Source of the DNA: Mytilus trossulus
Taxonomy: Eukaryota
DNA length: 64,000 nucleotides
Direction: 5' to 3'
NCBI RefSeq assembly: GCF_036588685.1
Contig: NC_086376.1
Span: forward strand, 58,218,001-58,282,000
Position 1 is the stretch's first letter. Each line of letters starts with the position of its first letter. A program made the position numbers and the translations under genes. Shown piece after piece: positions 215-64,000 of this stretch. Under the pieces are notes generated by a model that did not search any database, had not been told where the DNA came from, and saw nothing but the letters and a program-made list of their open reading frames with translations.

Positions 215-14954
<14,740 letters not shown>

Positions 14955-24600: not shown

Positions 24601-26100
24601 TTCATTAAGTGATAATACACATATACATAAACAGTATTAGATAACGAATAATGCCAACATACAATAGTTTAATAAATAAATAACAGTAGTATACCGATGT
24701 ATTAAATTCATACATCGATAGAGAAAAAATAAATCCGGGTTACAAACTAAAACTGAGGGAAACATATCAAATCTAAGAGAACTACGACACAACAGAAACA
24801 CATTATAATGTAAAACACACAGAAACGAAATATTTTATAACAATGGCCATTTTCCTGACTTGGTTCAGGGCATTTTAAGAAAAACAATGGTGGGTTGAAC
24901 CTGGTTAATAACAGTGGCGGATCATGGTTCAAACCATTAATATATTTCGATGTTTCGGCAACAAACCAAATTTACCTTAATTATTGGTTTCTTTTACATT
25001 TTGTACTGTAAATAACTGAAGTTTTCAGACTGAAGGGTTTCTCTAATGGTATTGTTTTATATATCTTTCACGTACATCTTCATATTTCCTACATTTGAAA
25101 TAAAACGATTCGCACCTTCAATTAATTTATCGTTGCGCTTTGAACGATAAAAAAACAAGCAAAAGGCTCGTTTTAAATTAAGACATATCATTCTATGTGT
25201 CTCTGATGTAACTCGGTTTTTCATGGTAGTAGCCTTTTTTGGGGGTAGTTTTGTAGGGTGCAAAAGTGTTGAGCATTCCCACATTATTAGTATGAAGCGA
25301 TTTCTAGTTTCAAATTAAATGTGTGTTCGTCCCGCCTTTACACACAAAAATACCGCAAGCATTCAATTCTTTACAACTTACTTTAGTCTCTACTGTCATT
25401 AACTTACAGGTTGATAAAAATAACTTTAAATTACAGAGATGGTAAAATTATTTTTTTATTGGAACGGACTGTTTCATTTACGTTGTAACTAATTTATCCT
25501 TGTAGTCTCAATATAGGTAGAACACCAGATGATGAATGTCTAAAATCATCTAATTTTCTTTACCTTATTAGTCAACATTTGACATGAATTTAGTGACAGG
25601 AATATCTCTGTTTAAGTGTTATATCCATCGCTTTACCTGTCAAACTTCATCTGGTTACCAAATATTGAATTAGCCATACCAACAAATCGATCGTGATCAA
25701 ATTTTTCACCCACTTATATGTTTGGGTAAATAATGTCTTGTTTGTATTATTATATAACCTATGTATGTTTCTTGAGTAATATATCACTGTTATTTTCGGA
25801 CATGACATGAAACAAATGAGTTAATGGCGTGTGTCTGGTTAGTCTAATCAATTAGAGATACGTCCTTGTCTTTATCTAGTGCAAAACGGAGATTGGTATT
25901 GCAGGTAGTAGATACCCTGAAATATAGTAACAGTACAGTACTATATACTTAGACAATATATAGATATGCTTCTAAAAACATATTTTCGAAGGTCATAGTT
26001 GATGAATAAAGATTAATTTGGCAAAACTTTTAGGAATTTTGGTACACAATGCTCTTCAACTTCGTACTTTATTTAGCATTTTTAAGGTTTTGGTATTCGA

Positions 26101-26144
26101 GCGTCACTGATGAGTCTTTTGTAGACGAAACGCGCGTCTGGCGT
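26101..26144 (+). ncRNA. Minimal type I hammerhead ribozyme (family L)
   Basis: GCGTCA-CTGATGA-GTCT tttgt AGAC-GAAA-C gcgc G-TC^-TGGCGT; within retrozyme fragment ~26015-26185. Confidence 0.88.
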
Positions 26145-28046
26145 ATATACTAAATTTAGTCCTGGTATCTATGATGAGTTTATTGTTATACCTTTTATGG
26201 GTCAGACAGCATCTTGGGTTTTTATACTTCCCTTGAATATCTTTATATTTGAAACGTTCCGTGAAATTTAGAGTCATAATCTTTAGATTTTTTTTAATCT
26301 TTTCCTTATATGATCTGCACATATACTCTGATGAGCTTTATTCAACCTTTACTGCCAGTATGATATGATATGACATTTGAAAGATCTACAGCAAATCAGT
26401 ATAATATTTTAGCGATATAAAACTTTATTTCTCTCCTATAAACTTCTATTTCTAAGACTCTTTTAAAAAATCAAAAACACTATCTCGTCAATCGAAGCTT
26501 ACAATAAGGGGTTTGTAAGGGCATATTTTTTATATTTAGCTTCTAAAATACTGATCAAAATCCAAAGATGAATACGCAAGGTTTGAATTCATCCAATTGT
26601 CGGATATTTTGACCAACAACATATCTGTTGAGTTTAGTTGAATTATTTGAGCTGACAGTCTGTATTTTTATTAGCATTAGTTGTTCATCCATAAAAGCTG
26701 TATAACTTAAACGCAACATAGAGCAACATTCAAACAAAATATATTCAAAGACAAGACATCTTGAAAAGGTTTGTTTTTACCTTCCGATATATTTTTGATA
26801 TTCTGTTACTCAATAACATCATGGTTTTTGGCGCTTACATTTCATATACTAGTTTTGCAGCGAACGCGAAAAGGAAGATACTTACAAAACGAAAATAGAA
26901 GGACTGCTTCATTACTTTATAACTCTAGATATTGAAGCAGATGGCCTATTTCAAAGAAAACAGTTTTTAATTACGGCAATAGCAGTTTAATAATAGTCAA
27001 ATCTCATTTATTGATTAATCAAGTTAATGAAATAATCATGAAGGTACAATAAAATGGCTGTGTCGACAGACTTATCCGTATTATTAGTTACATAGTGTGT
27101 TAGTGACCTAATATGATATAAACAGGGTCACCCCAGCTTTACGTACAATGGGCGTTTTTCTTCTTTGCGTGCAATTTATCAACGTTGACAAACGCTAGAC
27201 ATACGACAACATTTGTTATTTTAACGCCCAATAAACGCGTATATAAACTTCTCGTACGCCCTAAATACGCTGAAAGCTCGTTGTGAACACAATATAGAGA
27301 TGACTGACTTGTTAGTTGAAAGCGTCTAAAACTTCTGGCGTATTGGAAGTGTACATGTGTTTGACCACGCTCTGCGTACGTCGGTGCTATACGCTGATGT
27401 GTGACGCCGACGGGAAAAGACTCATCAGTGACGCTCAGATCAAAATAGAAAGAAGTAAAACAAATACAAAGTTGAATGAATACGCTTTAAATTTGTTTTT
27501 TTATAACGGGGTTTTCCGTTTTGAATTGTTCTCGGAGTTCAGTATTTTAAGAACAAAGAATGAACGTATTTTAGAGCATATTTTACAAGTTTTAGATGCT
27601 TTACTAGTAGACATATAATTCAAGTACATGCAACAATTAAACAATATTCACAATTACGAGTCCAGATATTTTTTGTTTGTCAAATTCTTTTCTATTTACT
27701 TTATCTTGGTATCAATAACATATATATAGAGACGGCCATCTTATAACAAGTGCATTGACACAATAAAACCTTTGTTTTCGGGAATTAATGCACCTTTTAG
27801 CTCTGTTAAATAAAGATTTTCAATTTTATCCTTTTTTGCAATCCTTAGTACATTATGTATACTAAAAGGAGTTTTCTTTGTCGTAAAACACTGAGGGGTT
27901 GTCAGAGTTGGTGAAATAAAAGACCGACCATAGGGAACTCTTATGGGCAACCCTGACCCTCAAAATTTTGTATGTAACAAGAAAACCTTTAAACATGCGT
28001 TATCTGACAGAAATATCGGCAACATATATAATGCTATGCAATATGA

Positions 28047-35124: not shown

Positions 35125-35168
35125 GCGTCACTGATGAGTCTTTTGTAGACGAAACTCGCGACTGGCGT
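35125..35168 (+). ncRNA. Hammerhead ribozyme (family L), probably inactive
   Basis: Core and stem II intact, but GAAA CTCGCG AC: the conserved U of the cleavage triplet is changed to A; within fragment ~35000-35205. Confidence 0.65.
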
Positions 35169-48800: not shown

Positions 48801-51800
48801 GGCTCATATCTTATTACTAATATCAAGACCACAAAATGAGTCAATTTTGTCAGTGCTACAGTTTTGCACAAAAGAGAAAGGTTTAAGCATCAATGCAGAT
48901 GTGTAAGACAGAATTTAAAAATAAACAGACGAATTACTTATAAAAAATAGAATATTACGGTTACATTATGGAATCAAAAGGTATAGAATATGATAAAAAT
49001 ATCGTTGTGGATATCTGGAACACAATCCGAATTTTAAAAAAAATGTGAAACAATACGAATCAAGCCAGATCAACTTTTTCTCATCTTGTGGTTCACATAA
49101 TGTTGTGAAAACTACAAGATAAGAAAAGGAATGAGGGTCTTCTAATAAGACGTACATATTGCACTTTAAAGCGAGAAATAACATGATGATACCTATACAC
49201 TGTTTCATTTTAACATATATAAAATTTTAACAGCCACCCCATGTACAACCGAACCTTGTTTGAATAATGGTACCTGTACAGTTGTAGAGGAGTCCTATAT
49301 TTGTGTTTGCCCTGATATATATGGTGGAACGACATGTGCAGGTCAGAATTTTATGTTTTTTACATAATATATTTTGTTTAAGATTAAACATGCATAATAG
49401 AGTTTGGTTTTAAATCAAATCAACGTCTCTTTAACATATATGTTTACATTTAGTTCCTTGTTGGTATTTGAGGTTCTTGAACTTTGAAAGATTTTTTGTT
49501 TTCAAAATTAATTTTTTTCGTGAGCCTCATAACTTTTTTTCCCGAGTGTGATTACTACATTATTCTTTTTCCCTTGTTTCGTCAAATATTACCGAAACGG
49601 CGGGTGCCACGCGTGACTAAGTATCATCTTATTCTCCTGGAGAACTTGAAATTACCCCAAATTTTGCTTGGGTTTGTGTTGCTTGTTTTCTATGTTGTGT
49701 GCTGTGTGTTTCTGTTTGTCTGTTTTTCTTTTTCATCCATGGTGTTGTCAGTTTATAATCGACTTATGATTAAGGTATCGTGAATAAGTTGTCATGCGCT
49801 TTTCAAATCGTTATAAATGGGGAATATTTTTATCGTGTCATTCTAGTTATCGTTCTTTTAGTTGGGAAAGATAAAAAAAAATAACACGAATTTTGATGTT
49901 TCACAAAGCGAACATTTTCTTCTGGCTAGTATATTAACTATAGAAAAAAACAAGAAAAATCATTTTTTCATCATTCCATAAATAATATATAGACGACAAT
50001 AAAAAAAAATCATAGTATCATTGCCGCGATAACACTACTAGAAGACTTCAAAGGGTAACAATAAGCAAACTAGACATTACGTCAATGAATGCTTTAAATT
50101 ATCCATACAAATAGCCTATTTATTAGCACTAATGTGAAATATTCTTAATAAGACAATTTTTATAAAAAAAATATGACACGATTAATGGTTAAAAAAAAGG
50201 TTCTAAAATTAATTTGATTATTCATTTTAAAATCAGAAAACCCTTGATTTGTATCCCTTTCATAAATTTCTTAGATTTGAACATCGGTATACTACTTTTG
50301 GAACTTTATTCCACATGTACAAGTATGACCTTTTGTTTCAGATAGAAAAATAAAAGACTGCAATGACCTGCCCCTAAATAGTAGTAGTGGAGTGTATACA
50401 CTTTACCTAGATAATAATATGGAAATATCAGTATTCTGTGAAATGTCTGTAGACGATGGAGGATGGACAGTAAGCAAAATTCTTTATAATGAACATTGGT
50501 CGGGAAGCCATTTTGCCTTCACAATAAACATTGATTAAGACTACATTGTCTTATCAACTTATCACTGCTACACTCTTTACACAATTATTTTTTTTATGAA
50601 ATATCTGTTATAACATCAACGTTAACAATTTTCTCATCAGATGCGCATTTTAACAGTAAATATTTCAAAATTTAATACTTGAAAAGTTTATAAACCACAA
50701 AGGACACACAAGAAAAGCAAGGTTTTTGCTCAAATAATCAATGTGGTTCAAGAACCTGCAATAAATCAATTTTGAATAAATTATTTTGAATTGACTTTTT
50801 TTCAGGTTGTACAAAGAAGATTAGATGGAAAAACGAATTTCCTAAGGTTTTGGGACGACTACAAAATTGGTTTTGGTAACCTCACTGGTGAACATTGGTT
50901 AGGTAGTTTATATACTATCAAGATAATGGAATTCTTATACTGTTAGTCCCGGAGCTTGTAAACAGCTCATGAGTCATTATTCATAGCAACTACTGGGCTC
51001 ATGATACCCTCAGGACTAACAGTTAAAAGCCTTAAATTGATAAATTGTTTTAATTGTAACACTATTTTGTTCGTACCGCAAAAATGATGAAATGGTACGA
51101 GATGAATATATTGAGGGACAAAACATACCTTTGAGAAGAACTGCACGAATTGTAACAACAAATAACATGAAAACGATATCGCAAAAAGGCTACACTTTTT
51201 ATTATGTAACATTGGGTTGATTATGTTTTAGTTCATAAAAAATGAATAGCCAACGTAGATACAAGTAGGTTGTCTTAGGGGGGATAAATCCTACATTTTA
51301 AAAAAAATCACTCTGATTCAAACAAAACATTCTCTGAAACTGGCATTTTCATGATGCATCGATAATGTATTTTTTTACGGTTGAAGGACGTGTTTTCCAA
51401 CAAACAATCACTTTTCCCATCGGATTGAACTGTGGTCCTCCTCTTGTCGACTATTTCCTTTATTCATTGGGGTGGGTTCATAAAGGAACTTCTTAATGAG
51501 AAAGAAAAGAAGTTAGCAGTATCCTTTAACTTTACTTTCCCCTATATAGATAATGTTCTCTCAATTAATATTTCAAAATTTGTTGACAATTTTGAACGGT
51601 TCTACCCATCGAACTTGAGATAAAGGATTCAACAGTTACAGTTAAGTCTGCCTCATATCTTGATCTCTGGACAACAAATAAAAATTGAAAATGATGGTGG
51701 GTTGGAAAAAAATCATTACGATAAAAGAACTTGCCATTTCCATGCAGCAACCTTCCAATAGCGCCCGCATAAAATTTCGTCCCCTTTTGACGAATTTGGC

Positions 51801-54800
51801 CTACCGAATTAGATTTATTGCCGGGTTTGTAAAAACATGATCAACATGACACATATGTAGCAGGATCTGATGACCTTTCTCGAGCAGAAACATCACCCCA
51901 TTTTTTGGTGGGGTTCGTGTTGCTCAGTTTTATATGTTGTGTTTTAGTAACTATTATTTACCTACTGTTAAATTGTTCCTCGCCCTGCTCGTCCGAACTT
52001 ATAAGTATCTAATAGACTAATACTTAAATTCAATAGGCTATACACAAGACAAACAAAGATATAGTATTAGGTGCTCGCAGTAACATATTGTTTTCTCTTT
52101 CGATACAATATTTCATTTTACTTTATGTTACAGATTTCTTCAATTCAAACAACATATGAATACACGACATTTGTTCTCTTTCGCATCGTTTCTTTTTGCT
52201 CGGCTAATACATCCAACGCCTATATGTACAATAAACATTGAGGCAATTGTAAATATACCAATGTGACCAACTTCTTTTCGACGCAACTGCGAGCATCGTC
52301 GATACTATAGATTTAAATGCCAAACTTTATATAGTACCATTAAACCCCACACGTAGAAACCGACAAAACTTTCCTCGTGCCTTAGGCACTTAACATCAAA
52401 CTTTAAAGATAGTACATTTTATTTTCCACTTATGACTTTGAATATATCTCTGGTGTCGTTGCATCTCTTCAAGATTTGACGATTTTTTTTATAAACTCTC
52501 TATTCTTTCTGATAACCAACATGTCAACGAATGAAAAAATAATCAAATATGATATCAACAAGGATCTGAAATTAATGAGATACAGATTTTTTAAAAAAAC
52601 GGTCTACTACACATTTAAATATTAGACATACATTTTATGTTACAAGTACTTATTTTGTTTTAGGTAATGACCATCTTCATTACATCTTGCTACAAAATGC
52701 TTACAAAGTTCGATTTGATCTCGAAGACTTTAATGGAAATACAGCGTATGCTTTATATAATACTTTCAATGTCAGCAACGAGGAAAGTGGCTACACATTG
52801 AGTATATCTGGTTACAGTGGAACTGCTGGTAAGATAGTAGCATGCCGCTGTACACTAGTCATAAATCGATTATACTGATTCAAAGCCGGGTCACAAACCA
52901 AAAGTGAGGGAAACACAATCAATCATAAAAGGACATTACAGCTCTTCTATAACATGCAAAACAAAATTTTGATCAACTTGCGTTCTATATTTGCTTGGAT
53001 GTTTGAAAACAATAGATAGGCGGAGTTTCAATTTATACTGGAATTTAATTGGACTTGAAGTGAAATTAATGTTTATTCCAGTATATAGTACAAACTACCT
53101 ACCTGTTGTTTACAAACAACCAAAAAAATATAGCAAGCAAGTTGATCAATGGTTTGCTTTGCATGCTTTTATAGAAGAACTGTAAAAGGGTGTCCGAATT
53201 ACAAAAAGTCGAAAAGAAACAATCAACCATGCATGGTCTCGCTAATGTGTATCATCATTTCGTGTGCAATTTAGTATAGACGATATCTAATTAAACATTG
53301 AGATGGCCTCTGAAAACTGACGACGGTCAAATGACCCGATATAAACATAGATATCACTGTATTAGAATGCGATCACGTACAACTGGATTTTTCAAGGACG
53401 TTTTGATTTTATATTATAAGTTAAATGGATTATAGCTCTTTATCTTTTATTTAAGCTTTGGATTTCAAATATTTTGGCCACGAGCATCACTGAAGAGACA
53501 TGTATTGTCGAAATGCGCATCTGGTGCAAGAAAATTGGTACCGTTAATTTTATTAAACATATCGCCTCTCCCTTGTTGCACTTTAAGTATTAACACTCGT
53601 TTTTTTAAACACTCCTAGTGCAGGCGAAACCCATCTCTAGCTAGAGTTACATTGAAGGTCACATAAATAAAGGCAATAGTAGTATAATGCTGTTCGAAAG
53701 TAAAACATCAATTGAGAGAAATTTAATTCAGGTTACAATCTTAAACCGAGGGAAACACTTCAACTATAAGGGGGAAACAACGAAACAACAGAGACACTGA
53801 AGTGCAACAAAAAACAAAAGATAATGCAACACACACAGAAACTATAAGATAACGTACTAAATTATAATCCTGGTACCTATAACAACTGCCATTTTCCTAA
53901 CTGAATACCGATGCAATGAGGTTAAACTTAACTTTTAATTTGCAAGTAAATAATACATCAGCGATGATTTATTTTTTTTAGTTTATTTAACAAATTTGGG
54001 CCAAAGTAACTTCTTATAACGTAATATTTTTCAAGTTCTGCTTTTATAACTTCTTCAAACAAAAAACAATTGGTTTTTTTTCTGTTTTTGTTTTGTATAA
54101 ATAGTTATCAAAAGTACCATGAATATAATTTAGTATGCCAGACGCGCGATTCGTCTTCATAAGTGACACTCATATCAAAATAGTTATACCTTAAGCCAAA
54201 CAAGTACAAAGTTTAAGAGCATTCAAGATCCAAAATTCCAAGAAGTTGTGCCAAATATGGCTAAGGTAATCTATACCTGGGATAAGAAAATCCTTAGTTT
54301 TTCCGAAAAATTCAAAGTTTTGTTAACAAGAAATTTATAAAAATGACCACATAATTGATATTAATGTCAACACCGAAGTACTGACTACTGGTGATACCCT
54401 CGGGGACGAAACGTCCATCAGCAGTGGCATCGACCGTATAAATCGTAGCCAAATCCCCTTTAAGTATCTCATAGATTTTGTCAACTGATAGTCGATAACA
54501 ACACTTAACGGTACAAGTTGTAACAATTTTCTGACAGCTTATTTTATGTTGATTACTCGAAGGATACGTTTTGATATTGGTCGATGTTCTTGAATATATC
54601 ATACAATCTTAGTCATATCTTAAAACAAAATGCCTACTAACTTCAATTTGATCACTAAGACTTATATGAAATATTGGTGGAACATTAATATTAAACAACA
54701 ACAACAACAACAAACAAAATCATAATTCGATGAATTTAAAAAAAAAAAAAGATTAACGGTACCGGTGCGCATTTCGACAATTTATGTATATTCGGGGCAA

Positions 54801-55153
54801 TAATATTTGAAAATTTCAAACCTTATACAAATGTTTATGTTTATCGGGTGAAATTTCAATTTGAACTTATTATTCTCCTGCATAGTATTTATGTTTCAAC
54901 AGGTGATTCTATGAAAGATTCCCAAGGTAACACTCATGACAATTTCATGTTTACCACTATTGACAGAGATAACGATGTAACCAGTAGTAATTGTGCTATT
55001 AATAAATTGAGCCCCTGGTGGCATGCTAGATGTACGTGGTCAAATATCAACGGACTTTATCTCGAAGGTTCTAGTGAAACCAACATGCATTGGAATAGCT
55101 GGAAAGGAAAATCTGGGCTCAAAACGACCAGAATGATGTTCAAGCCGAGTTGA
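45719..55153 (+). CDS. Gene B: type II transmembrane 2xEGF / fibrinogen-related domain protein, paralogue of gene A, 339 aa, apparently intact
   Basis: Exons 45719-45857, 47368-47391, 48087-48194, 49234-49341, 50342-50469, 50806-50902, 52664-52828, 54903-55153; total 1020 nt, open frame, all GT-AG. Confidence 0.9.
47368..47391 (+). CDS. Gene B 24-nt stalk micro-exon
   Basis: tttcag|AAGATTGCAGTTTACAAAATAAAG|gtaag = EDCSLQNK, homologous to DNCACNSQNK of gene A. Confidence 0.75.
48087..48194 (+). CDS. Gene B EGF1 exon
   Basis: 108 nt; DSPCSSNPCYYNSTCAVVDDALFCICPAGYMGTHCE. Confidence 0.9.
49234..49341 (+). CDS. Gene B EGF2 exon
   Basis: 108 nt; ATPCTTEPCLNNGTCTVVEESYICVCPDIYGGTTCA. Confidence 0.9.
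50342..50469 (+). CDS. Gene B FReD exon 1
   Basis: DRKIKDCNDLPLNSSSGVYTLYLDNNMEISVFCEMSVDDGGWT|gtaag. Confidence 0.92.
50806..50902 (+). CDS. Gene B FReD exon 2
   Basis: VVQRRLDGKTNFLRFWDDYKIGFGNLTGEHWLG. Confidence 0.92.
51340..51960 (+). mobile_element. Degenerate Penelope-like RT fragment in a gene B intron
   Basis: GRVFQQTITFPIGLNCGP..DYFLYS (decayed QxxGIPMG motif) and FNFTFPYIDNVLS, with frameshifts; similar to the 20095-20887 element. Confidence 0.7.
52664..52828 (+). CDS. Gene B FReD exon 3
   Basis: GNDHLHYILLQNAYKVRFDLEDFNGNTAYALYNTFNVSNEESGYTLSISGYSGTAG. Confidence 0.92.
53484..53527 (+). ncRNA. Minimal type I hammerhead ribozyme (family S), solitary, in the last intron of gene B
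   Basis: GCATCA-CTGAAGA-GACA tgtat TGTC-GAAA-TGCGCA-TC^-TGGTGC within a ~110-bp retrozyme fragment (~53427-53555). Confidence 0.88.
54100..54436 (-). mobile_element. Near full-length degenerate family L retrozyme monomer (ribozyme core partly deleted)
   Basis: Reverse complement of the 26015-26185 and 35000-35205 sequence, extended; other decayed pieces near 10460, 16030, 23065, 27415, 36470, 44716, 45465. Confidence 0.7.
54903..55153 (+). CDS. Gene B terminal FReD exon
   Basis: GDSMKDSQGNTHDNFMFTTIDRDNDVTSSNCAINKLSPWWHARCTWSNINGLY..KTTRMMFKPS*. Confidence 0.92.
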
Positions 55154-60525: not shown

Positions 60526-63500
60526 ATGGACACGTTTATAGTGCTTATATTATGTTTTGCTCGAGGTAAGACTTATTTTTAAAGGATATTGTATCTTAGA
60601 TATTAATTCCATGAGATAGCCTTCAGTTAACTCAATCATTTTCTGTTGGTGCAGAAAAGACAAACTTCAGAAAACAGTTGGGACATTGCTATATTTTATT
60701 TACGTCGTATTTATTGAGAATGTCCTTGTATGCAAACCTTTGCCACACTTCGGCAAATGGAACTTGTTTTAGCTGCTTTGATGTTCCTATATTCCGTATG
60801 TTAAACAAGGATGATATCCGGCTCTGTTTACAATGGCTTCGTCAATTTGATAAGTTAATAAACTGTTACGTCGTGGTCCCATTTGTTAAAACCCGGCAAC
60901 AAATCAGCGCCTCAAAAAATCACAGTATTTGATATATTTATTTCCAAATTTATACATTTTGTATATAAGAAATCTGTTTTGCCGCAGATCGCTGGCAATT
61001 AAACTGTCACTAATATAGCTGAAAATATGAGGTTAGCGGCAGATCGCCAATTATGGCAACTGTAGATTACAATGACTACCACAGCTTGTGGTAGTTGTGG
61101 TAGTTGGAGATAAGATAAGAACATTTAGATCACCGTTACCGTGGAAACACAGGTAAAGGGTCAAACCTTTACAGTGTTCATCTGTTGTGAAAGATACTTT
61201 TTATGAAACAGAATGTTTTGCGATGCAGCGAATTCTGCAACATCGAGGCATAGTTAATTCAGTCTTTGAGGAAAGTTATTTTACATCAATCAGAATTTTT
61301 CACGTGTTCATTTATTTAAATACACGTAGGTGTCCAGAAATGTCAACTCAAAAAGTCACCTAAAATTATAACATAAACCAAAGCAGTAGCTAACTCGTAA
61401 AATATTTATAAGACAGACAAGATATCAGTATAAAAGTTTTACTAATTTTCACAAGTTTTGACTCTTTTTTTATTTCTTGCATTTCATTCATATCTCAATG
61501 ATTCGATCATATTTCTTTTCTTATTTTTATTCAGATCCTTCAAATTCAGTTTGATAATGAGAGTCTAGGCACTACTTGATTAAATAGCAACATATTTGTA
61601 AAACAATACCAGTCATGGAAATTTCAAGCAATGGTGTTTCTTCTGTGACATGTCCTTAGTTTTAAGTGTTTTGTTACTTCCTTACGTTACTGATTTTAGT
61701 ATTCCAATGTTAACATTGTCCACATTCGTCGACCAAACAACACAACAGAATGTTAGACTTTAAATGGCATCTGCACCTGCAGGCACAAATCATTATAAAA
61801 ATAGGACAATCAAACAACACAATTATGTGTCCACACTTGCTATGCTTACGACTGGGAGGGACTGTGTGCTTTTGGTTTAATGCTAAGTTCAATTGTGTTC
61901 TGCTTTTTCTTAGATCCAAAATCAGAAGTAATTTTACGTCAGAATTTAAAGTTCAGTAACCACCAATGAGATAAGGGTCTCATTAAACTCAATAATAACC
62001 AACATAGCACTTATAGGTGAAAGGTGATTTTCGAATGTAATAGTTTTTACTTTTTTTCATTTTATCTAAGTCACATGGGGGACTATTTGTACACTGTAGG
62101 TATATACACGCAAAACATTGTACTTTTGAATAAAAACACAGTTTTTATTATATTGTGTAGTTGTCATGTCCTGTGATAATGTGGTAACCAGAGACCAATG
62201 GGGAGCCAGACCTTCGAAGAGCATTAACCTGATGTCAACGCCTGTTGGTTTTGTATTCATCCATCACACAGCCATGAGTTACTGCTTTGACCAGAACGCA
62301 TGCTCACAGCAACTTAAAGTCATTCAGAATTTTCATATGGACAATCGCAGTAAGTTTGTTTTAACCCCCTGTCCTTTAAAAGATAAGTTTTATGTCTTAT
62401 TTTTCAGTTTAAAAAACATGGTTATTTGGCTGTTGTTCGGTGGATTGGGATACAAAGTACACTACTAAAATTATGCAAAAAAGCTTCTTTTTTTTTTAAA
62501 TATACACAAATCCCCCTTGGTGTTTACGTGGTAATGTGCTCTCCTCGAATACAGGGGTAAGTAGGTTTAATACCTGGTCGGGTCTCACCAAAGATTTAAT
62601 TTATTTATATACTGCATTTCTGCAAAACAGCATTTAGGGTCAGCAAACGAACTATGTATGCAAGTTTGGCGACATGGATTAATGCACACTACATTACCAC
62701 CACGAAACCATTCCCAGTAAAACAAATATTGATATTACTTTATATATTCTCGTCCTGAATTGCAGACATTAGACTTAAAACACATGCGTATCGGCATCGC
62801 CATCGTAATACAATATTGGGGAATGGATATACTTTGACAAGCAGCAGATTTAAAAAAAACATGCAGTAGTCAGTACTTCGGTACTGCCGTACTGGTATGA
62901 AAATACGGATTTTTTTGTGTTATTAGAATTTGCTGTTACAAAGTATTAGAAATTATTAGAAATTAAGGAATGTATCTCCCTCATGCAAAGCTCTGATTCC
63001 TTTCACGAATTTGGCTATACTTTTTGGACCTTTTGGATTATAGCTCTTCATCTTTTATGTATGCTTTGGATTTCAAATATTTAGGCCACGAGCATCACTG
63101 AGGAGACATGTATTGTCGAAATGCGCATCTGGTGTAACAAAATTGGTACCGTTGATTTTATTACTTCCACTGGGTCGATGCCTCTGCTTGTGGACTATTA
63201 GTCCCCGAGGGTATCACCAGCCCAGTAGCCAGTACTTCGGTACTGGCATGAAAATACGGATTTTTTGTGTTATTAAAATTTGCTGTTACAAAATATTAGA
63301 AATTATTAGAAATTAAGGAATGTATCTCCCTCATGCAAAGCTCTGATTCCTTTCACAAATTTGGCTATACTTTTTGGACCTTTTGGATTATAGCTCTTCA
63401 TCTTTTATGTATGCAAATGGATTTCAAATATTTAGGCCACGAGCATCACTGAGGAGACATGTATTGTCGAAATGCGCATCTGGTGTAACAAAATTGGTAC

Positions 63501-64000
63501 CGTTGATTCTATTGGACAATGTTATAAAATACTGTCGTGGTGTATTTTTTTAAAAATTTTACTATTTAGATTTTATATTACATTTTTACTACAAATAAAG
63601 AAACTGTAACAGCTAATTTGAATTACAACATTATTTTTCAGCATGGGACGATATTGGATACAACTTTCTGATAGGAGAGGACGGTCAAGTATATGAAGCA
63701 CGAGGATGGGACAGAGTCGGGGCACATACGTACGGCTGGAATGACATTGCAGTTGCGTTTTCTATCATGGGAAATTTTAATGATCGTGTGCCCAACGACA
63801 AGGCTTTGACTGCACTTAAGAATGTTATTGAATGTGGTATCAGAATGGGAAAGATAACTCATAATTATAAGATGTACGGACATAGGGATGTAAGACAGAC
63901 TGAGTGTCCAGGGAACAGTTTATACGCTTTGATACAGACTTGGCCTCACTTTGGTCATACAAAACCAGTAAAACCAACCAGTTCATCACATCACCAGACT
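60526..64000 (+). CDS. PGRP: Peptidoglycan recognition protein, secreted, predicted Zn-dependent N-acetylmuramoyl-L-alanine amidase; 3' end lies beyond the window
   Basis: Exons 60526-60565 (MDTFIVLILCFAR, signal peptide completed by VVMS), 62161-62349 (VVTRDQWGARP..FIHHTA..IQNFHM), 63642->64000 (WDDIGYNFLIGEDGQVYEARGW..GAHT..GHRDVRQTECPG). Catalytic H/Y/H/C are all present. Confidence 0.93.
62518..62680 (+). mobile_element. Highly decayed tRNA-derived SINE (molluscan type)
   Basis: A-box-like GGTGTTTACGTGGT, B-box-like GGTTTAATACC, followed by GGTCGGGTCTCACCAAAGA; recognised from memory of mollusc SINE heads. Confidence 0.4.
63092..63135 (+). ncRNA. Minimal type I hammerhead ribozyme (family S)
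   Basis: GCATCA-CTGAGGA-GACA tgtat TGTC-GAAA-T gcgc A-TC^-TGGTGT; predicted cleavage after 63129. Confidence 0.9.
63443..63486 (+). ncRNA. Minimal type I hammerhead ribozyme (family S)
   Basis: Identical to 63092-63135; predicted cleavage after 63480. Confidence 0.9.

What the first reader, a model, noticed from the sequence alone, without database searches (positions are those of the whole stretch)
62864..63513. Tandem hammerhead retrozyme in sense orientation inside a PGRP intron: an immune transcript that could release a 351-nt circular RNA
Seen: two near-identical direct repeats, each with an intact type I hammerhead (CUGAGGA..GAAA..UC). Predicted cleavage sites at 63129 and 63480 are 351 nt apart and on the PGRP coding strand; stem III is a single pair around the palindrome ATGCGCAT. 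Established: minimal HHRs with palindromic stem III cleave efficiently mainly as dimers, and metazoan non-LTR retrozymes give abundant small circRNAs (mussel families of about this size have been reported, as I recall, so the element class is not new). Inference: here both ribozymes sit in one pre-mRNA, so the dimer fold can form. PGRP transcription could excise a monomer or circle, and cleavage could compete with splicing, linking immune induction to retrozyme output.
Basis: partly seen in the sequence, partly recalled or inferred. Interest (0 to 1): 0.8.

Follow-up and report, generated by a model that had tools for sequence, protein, structure and literature searches.

The report
Mussel retrozyme copy in PGRP intron
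This is a real but ordinary copy of an abundant, already published mussel mobile element that carries self-cutting hammerhead RNA motifs. It sits in an intron of an immune gene, and nothing here shows that it affects that gene.

Summary
Window 62864-63513 is 1.85 tandem units of a 351-nt repeat. Each unit carries an identical type I hammerhead motif, with predicted cuts after C63129 and C63480, 351 nt apart. Homology to other PGRPs confirms the host intron (62350-63641) and the sense orientation.

The element is one copy of a mussel retrozyme family. The genome holds 27,900 motifs of this architecture and 5,144 of this lineage. All 21 insertions examined with both ends in view stop at the same 3' base and are 5'-truncated to varying degrees, which is the Penelope-like pattern. 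The class was published in 2020 for Mytilus galloprovincialis. This scan has already noted it 289 times in this genome, including at least ten sense-in-intron cases.

The two units share five rare variants, so they come from one template, but they differ by about 3.5%, so the insertion is not young.

The proposed link to immune induction is untested. The link is also unlikely to matter. The related tested ribozyme is slow (about 0.1 per min), and the cut sites lie only 161 and 512 nt from the acceptor. No daughter copies of this locus were found.

Verdict: ordinary, low interest.

The parts
62161..62349 (+). PGRP coding exon A. The possible start codon is ATG 62166, and the exon ends before the GTAAGT donor at 62350.
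   Evidence: The translation of 62163-62348 aligns to residues 21-81 of a 201-aa clam PGRP (67% identity) and to residues 1-63 of P0001. The sequence was read.
62350..63641 (+). Phase-1 intron of 1292 nt, with donor GTAAGT and acceptor ttatttttcAG. The retrozyme fills half of it.
   Evidence: Exons A and B align to contiguous residues 21-81 and 83-201 of P0005. The split codon is A + CA.
62864..63513 (+). Whole retrozyme insertion of 650 bp: 1.85 units, 36.8% G+C, no target-site duplication found.
62864..63129 (+). 5'-truncated unit (unit positions 94-351). It carries private changes, including an 8-nt duplication at about 62881-62888.
63092..63135 (+). Hammerhead 1: helix I 63092-63097 paired with 63130-63135, core CUGAGGA 63098-63104, helix II 63105-63117, GAA 63118-63120, helix III 63121-63128, C17 at 63129.
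   Evidence: Motif search; pair counts.
63130..63480 (+). The 351-nt monomer from cleavage site to cleavage site, the RNA that would be released.
63443..63486 (+). Hammerhead 2, identical to hammerhead 1: core 63449-63455, C17 at 63480, helix I 3' strand 63481-63486.
63481..63513 (+). 33-nt tail after the second cleavage site. It ends at the family's fixed 3' terminus, ...GATT(C/T)TATT.
   Evidence: 21 of 21 independent insertions end at unit position about 33.
63642..64000 (+). PGRP exon B (Amidase_2 domain). It runs 13 nt past the window to the stop codon.
   Evidence: Pfam PF01510, E = 3.6e-17. The full reading frame is, and solved PGRP structures match with E down to 2e-36.

Best explanation
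An ordinary, moderately old insertion of the 351-nt lineage of the mussel non-LTR (Penelope-type) hammerhead retrozyme.

One retrotransposition event copied a single RNA template 1.85 times round. This gives a 5'-truncated unit followed by a full unit, ending at the family's fixed 3' base. The copy landed in a pre-existing intron of about 640 nt in a short, amidase-type PGRP gene, on the coding strand.

Both hammerheads are still intact. Whenever PGRP is transcribed they are part of the pre-mRNA or the excised intron, and they may slowly cut out a 351-nt RNA with 5'-OH and 2',3'-cyclic phosphate ends that a tRNA ligase could circularise.

This is a passive by-product. The ribozyme is slow relative to transcription of the remaining 161-512 nt of intron, so splicing is expected to be unaffected, and the locus adds a negligible share to retrozyme RNA made from thousands of other copies.

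Shown: identity, structure, family membership, intron position and orientation. Inferred: self-cleavage, release of the monomer and absence of any effect on PGRP.
For: - Family size: 27,900 motifs of the architecture and 5,144 of this lineage in the 1.30-Gb genome, with reversed-pattern controls of 0. The unit has at least 844 candidate places.
- Ends: the 3' end is fixed at unit position about 33 and the 5' start varies in 21 of 21 insertions. There is no poly-A and no target-site duplication. These match the published hallmarks of Penelope-like elements: 5' truncation, partial tandems and a 30-40-bp tail (PMC8557442).
- One template: the two units share 5 derived variants, three of them absent from 62 other units. 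Every site where the units differ has the consensus base in one of them.
- The G at core position 7 occurs in only 19 of about 5,100 lineage motifs, and both units here carry it.
- Ribozyme structure: 96.7% of cells are paired, 4 pairs show compensatory changes between the two lineages, and 0 of 500 shuffles reach this.
- The window copy at 26107 has a 32-nt motif identical to the published Mg353 construct, which self-cleaves in vitro (PMC7229834).
- Intron position confirmed.
- Kinetics and splicing: PMC7229834 gives kobs of about 0.1 per min. PMC10919898 summarises that slow intronic ribozymes did not affect splicing.
Against: - No RNA data could be examined, so neither PGRP splicing nor any RNA from this locus was seen.
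- Nearest-neighbour folding does not favour the active fold. The single hammerhead scores -3.3 kcal/mol against an optimum of -8.1 (P about 3e-5). The full double hammerhead has P about 4e-10 in the 650-nt transcript.
- Rfam hammerhead models do not match.
- This lineage's ribozyme, with G at position 7, has not itself been assayed.
- The rate used is from a sister lineage in vitro, not from a mussel cell.
Confidence: 0.85

Rival explanations
1. One reading: the locus is functionally coupled to PGRP. Immune induction of PGRP drives a meaningful output of a 351-nt circular RNA, and ribozyme cleavage competes with splicing so as to tune PGRP mRNA.
For: - Sense orientation inside the intron.
- Two intact ribozymes in one transcript.
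- Inter-unit helix III pairing has a predicted probability of 0.33-0.56 in the 650-nt transcript.
- There is precedent for an intronic ribozyme lowering expression of its host gene (Cpeb3, PMC10919898).
Against: - The sister ribozyme is slow (about 0.1 per min, PMC7229834), while the acceptor lies only 161 and 512 nt downstream.
- Inter-unit helix III probability falls to about 0.1 in the whole intron, helix I is about 0, and the full double hammerhead is about 4e-10.
- It is one of 5,144 lineage motifs.
- The two units have drifted by about 3.5% with no sign of constraint outside what chance allows.
- Ten of the 17 other position-7 G copies were examined and none carries this locus's other markers, so no progeny were found.
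- Many other sense-intron copies are noted in this genome, and two follow-ups judged them ordinary.
Confidence: 0.07
2. The 1.85-unit tandem arose by DNA-level duplication or slippage of a single inserted unit, or is a piece of satellite DNA. It was not copied from RNA in one event.
For: The shared rare variants in both units would also follow from a duplication after insertion.
Against: Across the family, insertions longer than one unit are the rule. All end at the same base and start at arbitrary positions. DNA slippage does not predict this, but retro-insertion of a multimeric or circular template does.
Confidence: 0.05
3. The copy is inert. The hammerheads do not cleave in the intron context, because the rod-like fold sequesters helix I, so no monomer is ever released from this locus.
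For: Predicted probability of helix I is about 0 in every context folded. PMC7229834 notes that some predicted mussel circRNA structures do not leave the ribozyme free.
Against: The sister ribozyme cleaves during transcription in vitro (PMC7229834). Folding during transcription is not captured by equilibrium prediction. The helices covary between lineages.
Confidence: 0.25

Closest known systems
Mytilus galloprovincialis non-LTR retrozyme (construct Mg353; Cervera and de la Pena 2020, PMC7229834)
   Same: - Tandem units of about 350 nt, low G+C, one type I hammerhead per unit.
- The same ribozyme architecture: 6-bp helix I, 4-bp helix II with a 5-nt loop, and a 2-bp helix III capped by GCGC.
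- A conserved block, CCACTGGGTCGATGCC...CCGAGGGTATCACCAGCCCAGTAG, read by eye against the supplement.
- A 3' terminus ending in TTTATT.
   Different: This is a sister lineage.
- Helix II is GACA/UGUC instead of GUCU/AGAC.
- Helix III has U-A instead of C-G.
- Helix I has A-U instead of G-C at one pair. All of these changes are compensatory.
- The AT-rich middle of the unit is not alignable by eye.
- The published divergent primer 110D would probably not prime on it, so circles of this lineage were probably not among the published clones.
Penelope-like elements and their non-autonomous derivatives (PMC8557442; bioRxiv 10.64898/2026.07.22.740005)
   Same: - Variable 5' truncation, a fixed 3' end, partial tandem insertion and a tail of about 33 nt.
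- A hammerhead near the 3' end.
- A core of at least 33 nt of the retrozyme's 5' block resembles a segment just upstream of, or at the start of, the long reading frame of a GIY-YIG element in this genome. Local score is 37 against 16 +/- 2.4 in shuffles.
   Different: It has no reading frame. The autonomous partner was not identified with certainty, and the elements that share the segment showed no hammerhead in the part examined.
Newt satellite 2 / axolotl retrozymes and avocado sunblotch viroid double hammerheads
   Same: A short helix III with a palindromic loop region allows two tandem ribozymes to pair into a double hammerhead. The cofold optimum here is that structure.
   Different: The mussel relative cleaves from a single-ribozyme construct (PMC7229834), so the dimer is not shown to be needed. 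It is also not favoured in the full-length context.
Intronic self-cleaving ribozymes of host genes (Cpeb3 HDV-like ribozyme, PMC10919898; amniote intronic hammerheads, cited there)
   Same: A self-cleaving motif in sense within an intron of a protein-coding gene.
   Different: Those are single-copy and conserved across species, and the Cpeb3 ribozyme lies about 10 kb from the next exon. This one is a copy of a repeat with thousands of members, 161-512 nt from the exon, with no evidence of conservation.

Membership tests
Type I hammerhead ribozyme | Conserved core CUGANGA ... GAAA ... UH at a three-way junction | tested here: met
   Both units read CUGAGGA / GAAA / UC exactly. Chance expectation is 0.00.
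Type I hammerhead ribozyme | Helices I, II and III supported by base pairing, with helix I open (type I) | tested here: met
   12 pairs, 96.7% of cells paired, 4 pairs with compensatory change between lineages, 0 of 500 shuffles as good; slid controls give 12-47% paired. Helices II and III are capped by loops and helix I is open.
Type I hammerhead ribozyme | Self-cleavage 3' of C17 | not testable with these tools
   Only a sister-lineage construct was assayed, in PMC7229834. Equilibrium folding does not favour the active fold.
Type I hammerhead ribozyme | Recognised by curated Rfam hammerhead models (a practical test, not a defining feature) | tested here: not met
   No hammerhead family matched at gathering score or at E up to 10. 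The short helices give low scores.
Metazoan non-LTR retrozyme | Tandem units of about 150-450 bp, each with a type I hammerhead, low G+C, many dispersed copies | tested here: met
   351-nt unit, 37-38% G+C, 5,144 lineage motifs on all large contigs, arrays from 1.1 to more than 20 units.
Metazoan non-LTR retrozyme | No LTRs, primer-binding site or polypurine tract | tested here: inconclusive
   No terminal repeats other than the tandem units, and no tRNA-like element. A primer-binding site or polypurine tract was not searched for explicitly.
Metazoan non-LTR retrozyme | Expressed as a unit-length circular RNA | not tested
Penelope-type non-autonomous retroelement | Fixed 3' end, variable 5' truncation, partial tandem with a short tail | tested here: met
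   21 of 21 insertions with both ends in view. This locus is a truncated unit plus a full unit.
Penelope-type non-autonomous retroelement | Sequence shared with an autonomous partner | tested here: inconclusive
   A core of at least 33 nt is shared with GIY-YIG elements L054, L055, L059 and L068 (z about 9). The element boundaries were not mapped.
PGRP (Amidase_2, PF01510) | Domain match and zinc/catalytic residues | tested here: met
   PF01510, E = 3.6e-17. PDB PGRPs match with E down to 2e-36. IHHT, GYNF, GHRD and TECPG are read in the translations; the Cys indicates the amidase-type.

The most novel reading that the evidence does not exclude
Sense-oriented intronic retrozyme dimers such as this one might be real transcription sources for retrozyme circular RNA. 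Circle output would then follow the host gene, here an immune amidase, and ribozyme cleavage would measurably lower the spliced mRNA. This would make PGRP expression depend on insertion genotype.
Probability: 0.05. Interest if true: 0.6.

Novelty: new member of a known kind. Interest (0 to 1): 0.17.

Why it matters
It matters little as it stands. The locus adds one annotated copy, and a probably undescribed sister lineage with compensatory helix changes, to a published class.

Its use is as a convenient test case. The copy carries a unique set of markers (unit positions 6, 37, 60, 180, 228, 280, 286-288, 305 and 324, which are window positions 63135, 63166, 63189, 63309, 63357, 63409, 63415-63417, 63434 and 63453). 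It sits in a gene that can be induced. So it could show whether host-gene transcription feeds the retrozyme circular RNA pool, which is an open point for animal retrozymes.

Tried and rejected
- Rfam at gathering score and at E up to 10: no hammerhead hit, only chance sRNA matches.
- ARAGORN: no tRNA-like part.
- The sigma-70 and terminator scan is irrelevant for a eukaryote and gave chance-level counts.
- Searching the assembly for an allele or paralogue with an empty site found only the locus itself and one 66%-identical paralogue exon.
- Equilibrium folding neither supports nor excludes activity.
- No target-site duplication was found.
- The word search for the PGRP exon found no exact protein. 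The best hit was 82% identical.
- The spliced PGRP model was searched exon by exon only. The joined protein was not built or searched.
It was compared by eye, and through the window's own copy of that lineage at 26107.
Full report
**What is there.**
Window 62864-63513 is a 650-bp block made of a 351-nt unit repeated 1.85 times. Tandem Repeats Finder reports period 350, 1.8 copies and 96% matches. Pairwise alignment and BLAST against the monomer set the ends at 62864 and 63513. Counting from the predicted cleavage site, the block has three parts:
- unit positions 94-351 (62864-63129);
- a full unit (63130-63480);
- positions 1-33 (63481-63513).

Each unit carries the identical 32-nt string CTGAGGAGACATGTATTGTCGAAATGCGCATC, at 63098-63129 and 63449-63480. 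This reads as a type I hammerhead:
- Helix I is GAGCAUCA paired with UGGUGU: 6 pairs, two of them G-U.
- The core is CUGAGGA.
- Helix II is GACA/UGUC with a 5-nt loop.
- GAAA follows.
- Helix III is A-U plus U-A, closed by GCGC.
- C17 is at 63129 and 63480.

Helix III is two pairs, not one.

**Is it more than chance, and is it a hammerhead?**
A degenerate pattern for this architecture is expected 0.00 times in shuffles of the window and occurs 6 times. In the whole 1.30-Gb assembly it occurs 27,900 times, and the same pattern read backwards occurs 0 times.

Rfam does not recognise it, either at gathering score or at E up to 10 on 951 nt. I therefore tested the fold directly. I aligned the six window motifs, which belong to two lineages. 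The three helices pair in 96.7% of cells, and four pairs change on both sides between the lineages: two in helix II, one in helix III and one in helix I. No shuffle out of 500 reaches the observed pairing or covariation score, and sliding the partners by 1-3 columns drops pairing to 12-47%.

The window copy at 26107 has a 32-nt motif identical to the published M. galloprovincialis construct Mg353. That construct self-cleaves during transcription at about 0.1 per min (PMC7229834). Activity of the present lineage, whose core position 7 is G at this locus, is inferred and not shown.

**What family it belongs to.**
- The monomer has at least 844 candidate places in the genome. The scored ones are 92-97% identical, and they range from 1.1-unit insertions to arrays of more than 20 units.
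- The lineage-specific hammerhead occurs 5,144 times.
- In all 21 independent insertions whose two ends lay inside the fetched loci, the 3' end is at the same base (...GTTGATTTTATT, unit position about 33). The 5' start is anywhere: positions 1, 6, 7, 18, 32, 64, 94, 174 ... 321. None has a poly-A tail or an evident target duplication.
- The Mg353-type copy at 26015-26186 also ends in ...TTTATT.

These are the published hallmarks of Penelope-like elements and their non-autonomous derivatives: strong 5' truncation, partial tandems and a tail of 30-40 bp (PMC8557442). A 2026 preprint argues that animal retrozymes are such derivatives (10.64898/2026.07.22.740005).

As a partial test I fetched 30 GIY-YIG loci from this genome. 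Four of them (L054, L055, L059, L068) have open frames of up to about 1,000 codons. Just upstream of, or at the start of, the frame they carry a segment that matches the retrozyme's conserved 5' block. Local score is 37, against 16 +/- 2.4 and a maximum of 26 in 500 shuffles, and there is further similarity across the tail-head junction. That fits a Penelope-like partner but does not identify it.

**History of this copy.**
Against a consensus of 62 other units, the two units here share five derived bases, at unit positions 6, 180, 280, 305 and 324. Three of these are absent from all 62. At every site where the two units differ, one of them has the consensus base. The G at core position 7 (unit 324) is found in only 19 of about 5,100 lineage motifs genome-wide, and both units here carry it.

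So both units descend from one template, as expected if one RNA (a circle or a uniform multimer) was copied more than once round. They then diverged by about 3.5%: 5 substitutions, an 8-nt duplication and one extra T in unit 1; one substitution and a 3-nt patch in unit 2. The insertion is therefore not young.

I examined ten of the 17 other loci with G at position 7. None carries the other markers, so no daughter copies of this locus were found.

**The host gene.**
- The translation of 62163-62348 aligns to residues 21-81 of a 201-aa clam PGRP. The translation of the downstream exon aligns to residues 83-201. Residue 82 is the split codon.
- This fixes a phase-1 intron at 62350-63641, with a GTAAGT donor and a pyrimidine-rich acceptor.
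- The downstream exon matches Pfam Amidase_2 (E = 3.6e-17) and solved PGRP structures. It ends in a stop codon 13 nt beyond the window.
- The motifs IHHT, GYNF, GHRD and TECPG are present, so the protein is of the amidase type.
- The closest protein in the collection (P0001, 186 aa, 82% identical in exon B) starts MSCDNV, like the ATG at 62166. The coding region may therefore have only these two exons.

The retrozyme is on the coding strand and fills half of the intron. Its 3' end is 128 nt from the acceptor, so the branch-point region is untouched. I searched the exons separately and did not build or search the joined protein.

No RNA evidence could be obtained. The look-up of sequencing runs listed 24 runs in 14 studies holding parts of the stretch.

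What can be said is indirect.

- *Folding.* The two 57-nt ribozyme segments cofold into a double hammerhead with an 8-bp helix III (optimum -26.5 kcal/mol; the helix III duplex alone is -11.9). The single hammerhead fold scores -3.3, against an optimum of -8.1. In the 650-nt transcript the inter-unit helix III has probability 0.33-0.56, but this falls to about 0.1 in the whole intron. Helix I is about 0 in every context, and the complete double hammerhead has P about 4e-10. The published sister ribozyme cleaves from a one-ribozyme construct.
- *Kinetics.* At about 0.1 per min the half-time is about 7 min, whereas only 512 and 161 nt separate the cut sites from the acceptor. Work summarised in PMC10919898 found that fast intronic ribozymes abort splicing and slow ones do not. 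The Cpeb3 ribozyme, which does affect its host gene, has a half-time of 2-3 min and lies about 10 kb from the next exon. I therefore expect no appreciable loss of PGRP mRNA. The monomer could still be cut from the pre-mRNA or the excised intron.
- *Numbers.* This is one of 5,144 lineage motifs and 27,900 of the architecture, so its share of a pool that reaches up to 1% of total RNA in mussel tissues (PMC7229834) would be minute.
- *Position.* An intronic location is not special. In Xenopus 42-44% of retrozymes are intronic. A second, truncated copy of the same lineage sits in sense in a fibrinogen-related gene intron 10 kb upstream in this window. This scan's notebook holds 289 notes on hammerhead retrozymes in this genome, at least ten of them "sense in an intron", and two follow-ups judged them ordinary.

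**Comparison with what is known, and verdict.**
The element is a member of the metazoan non-LTR retrozyme class and a sister lineage of the published Mytilus family. The published text describes its two ribozyme consensus types as differing only in loops 1 and 2 and in the upper part of helix I. This lineage also differs in the stems of helices II and III, so it is probably not one of those two. The published figure is not available to me, so this point stays uncertain.

The locus is a new member of a known kind. The functional link to PGRP is an untested idea with low prior probability. Interest is low.

Noticed in passing
window 53426-53555 (+): A 130-nt 5'-truncated copy of the same 351 lineage (unit positions 255-351 plus 1-34, one hammerhead, CTGAAGAG core). 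It has the same fixed 3' end. It lies between two Fibrinogen_C exons (52579-52875 and 54740-55150, + strand), so it is in sense in an intron of a fibrinogen-related gene.
   Followed up: partly
window 26107, 29505, 35131, 53490, 63098, 63449: All six hammerhead motifs in the 64-kb window are on the + strand, the same strand as the two fibrinogen-related genes and the PGRP gene. Three are of the published Mg353 type; the one at 35131 has lost two pairs. Five independent insertions are too few for a test of orientation bias.
   Followed up: no
L054, L055, L059, L068 (about 1000-1105 in each); also L051 and L058 on the other strand: Elements with a GIY-YIG domain and open frames of up to about 1,000 codons share a core of at least 33 nt (CTGCTGGTGG..ATTATTCCCCGAGGGCATCA), plus flanking similarity, with the retrozyme's conserved 5' block and tail-head junction. 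This is a possible autonomous Penelope-like partner. No hammerhead was seen in the part examined.
   Followed up: partly
window 62873-62897 and 63231-63247: The unit contains a perfect hairpin with a UUCG tetraloop (CCAGUAC UUCG GUACUGG). In unit 1 an 8-nt duplication (about 62881-62888) disrupts it.
   Followed up: no
window 62910-62926: A private A-to-G change in unit 1 creates TTTTTTTGTGTTATTAG, a pyrimidine tract followed by AG on the coding strand. This could act as a cryptic acceptor inside the PGRP intron. Untested for lack of RNA data.
   Followed up: no
window 12593-14951 and 50392-55150 (+): Two fibrinogen-related (Fibrinogen_C) genes lie upstream of the PGRP gene on the same strand, so the window is a small cluster of innate-immune recognition genes. 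There is also an EGF-like exon at 1521-1805.
   Followed up: partly
   Followed up: no
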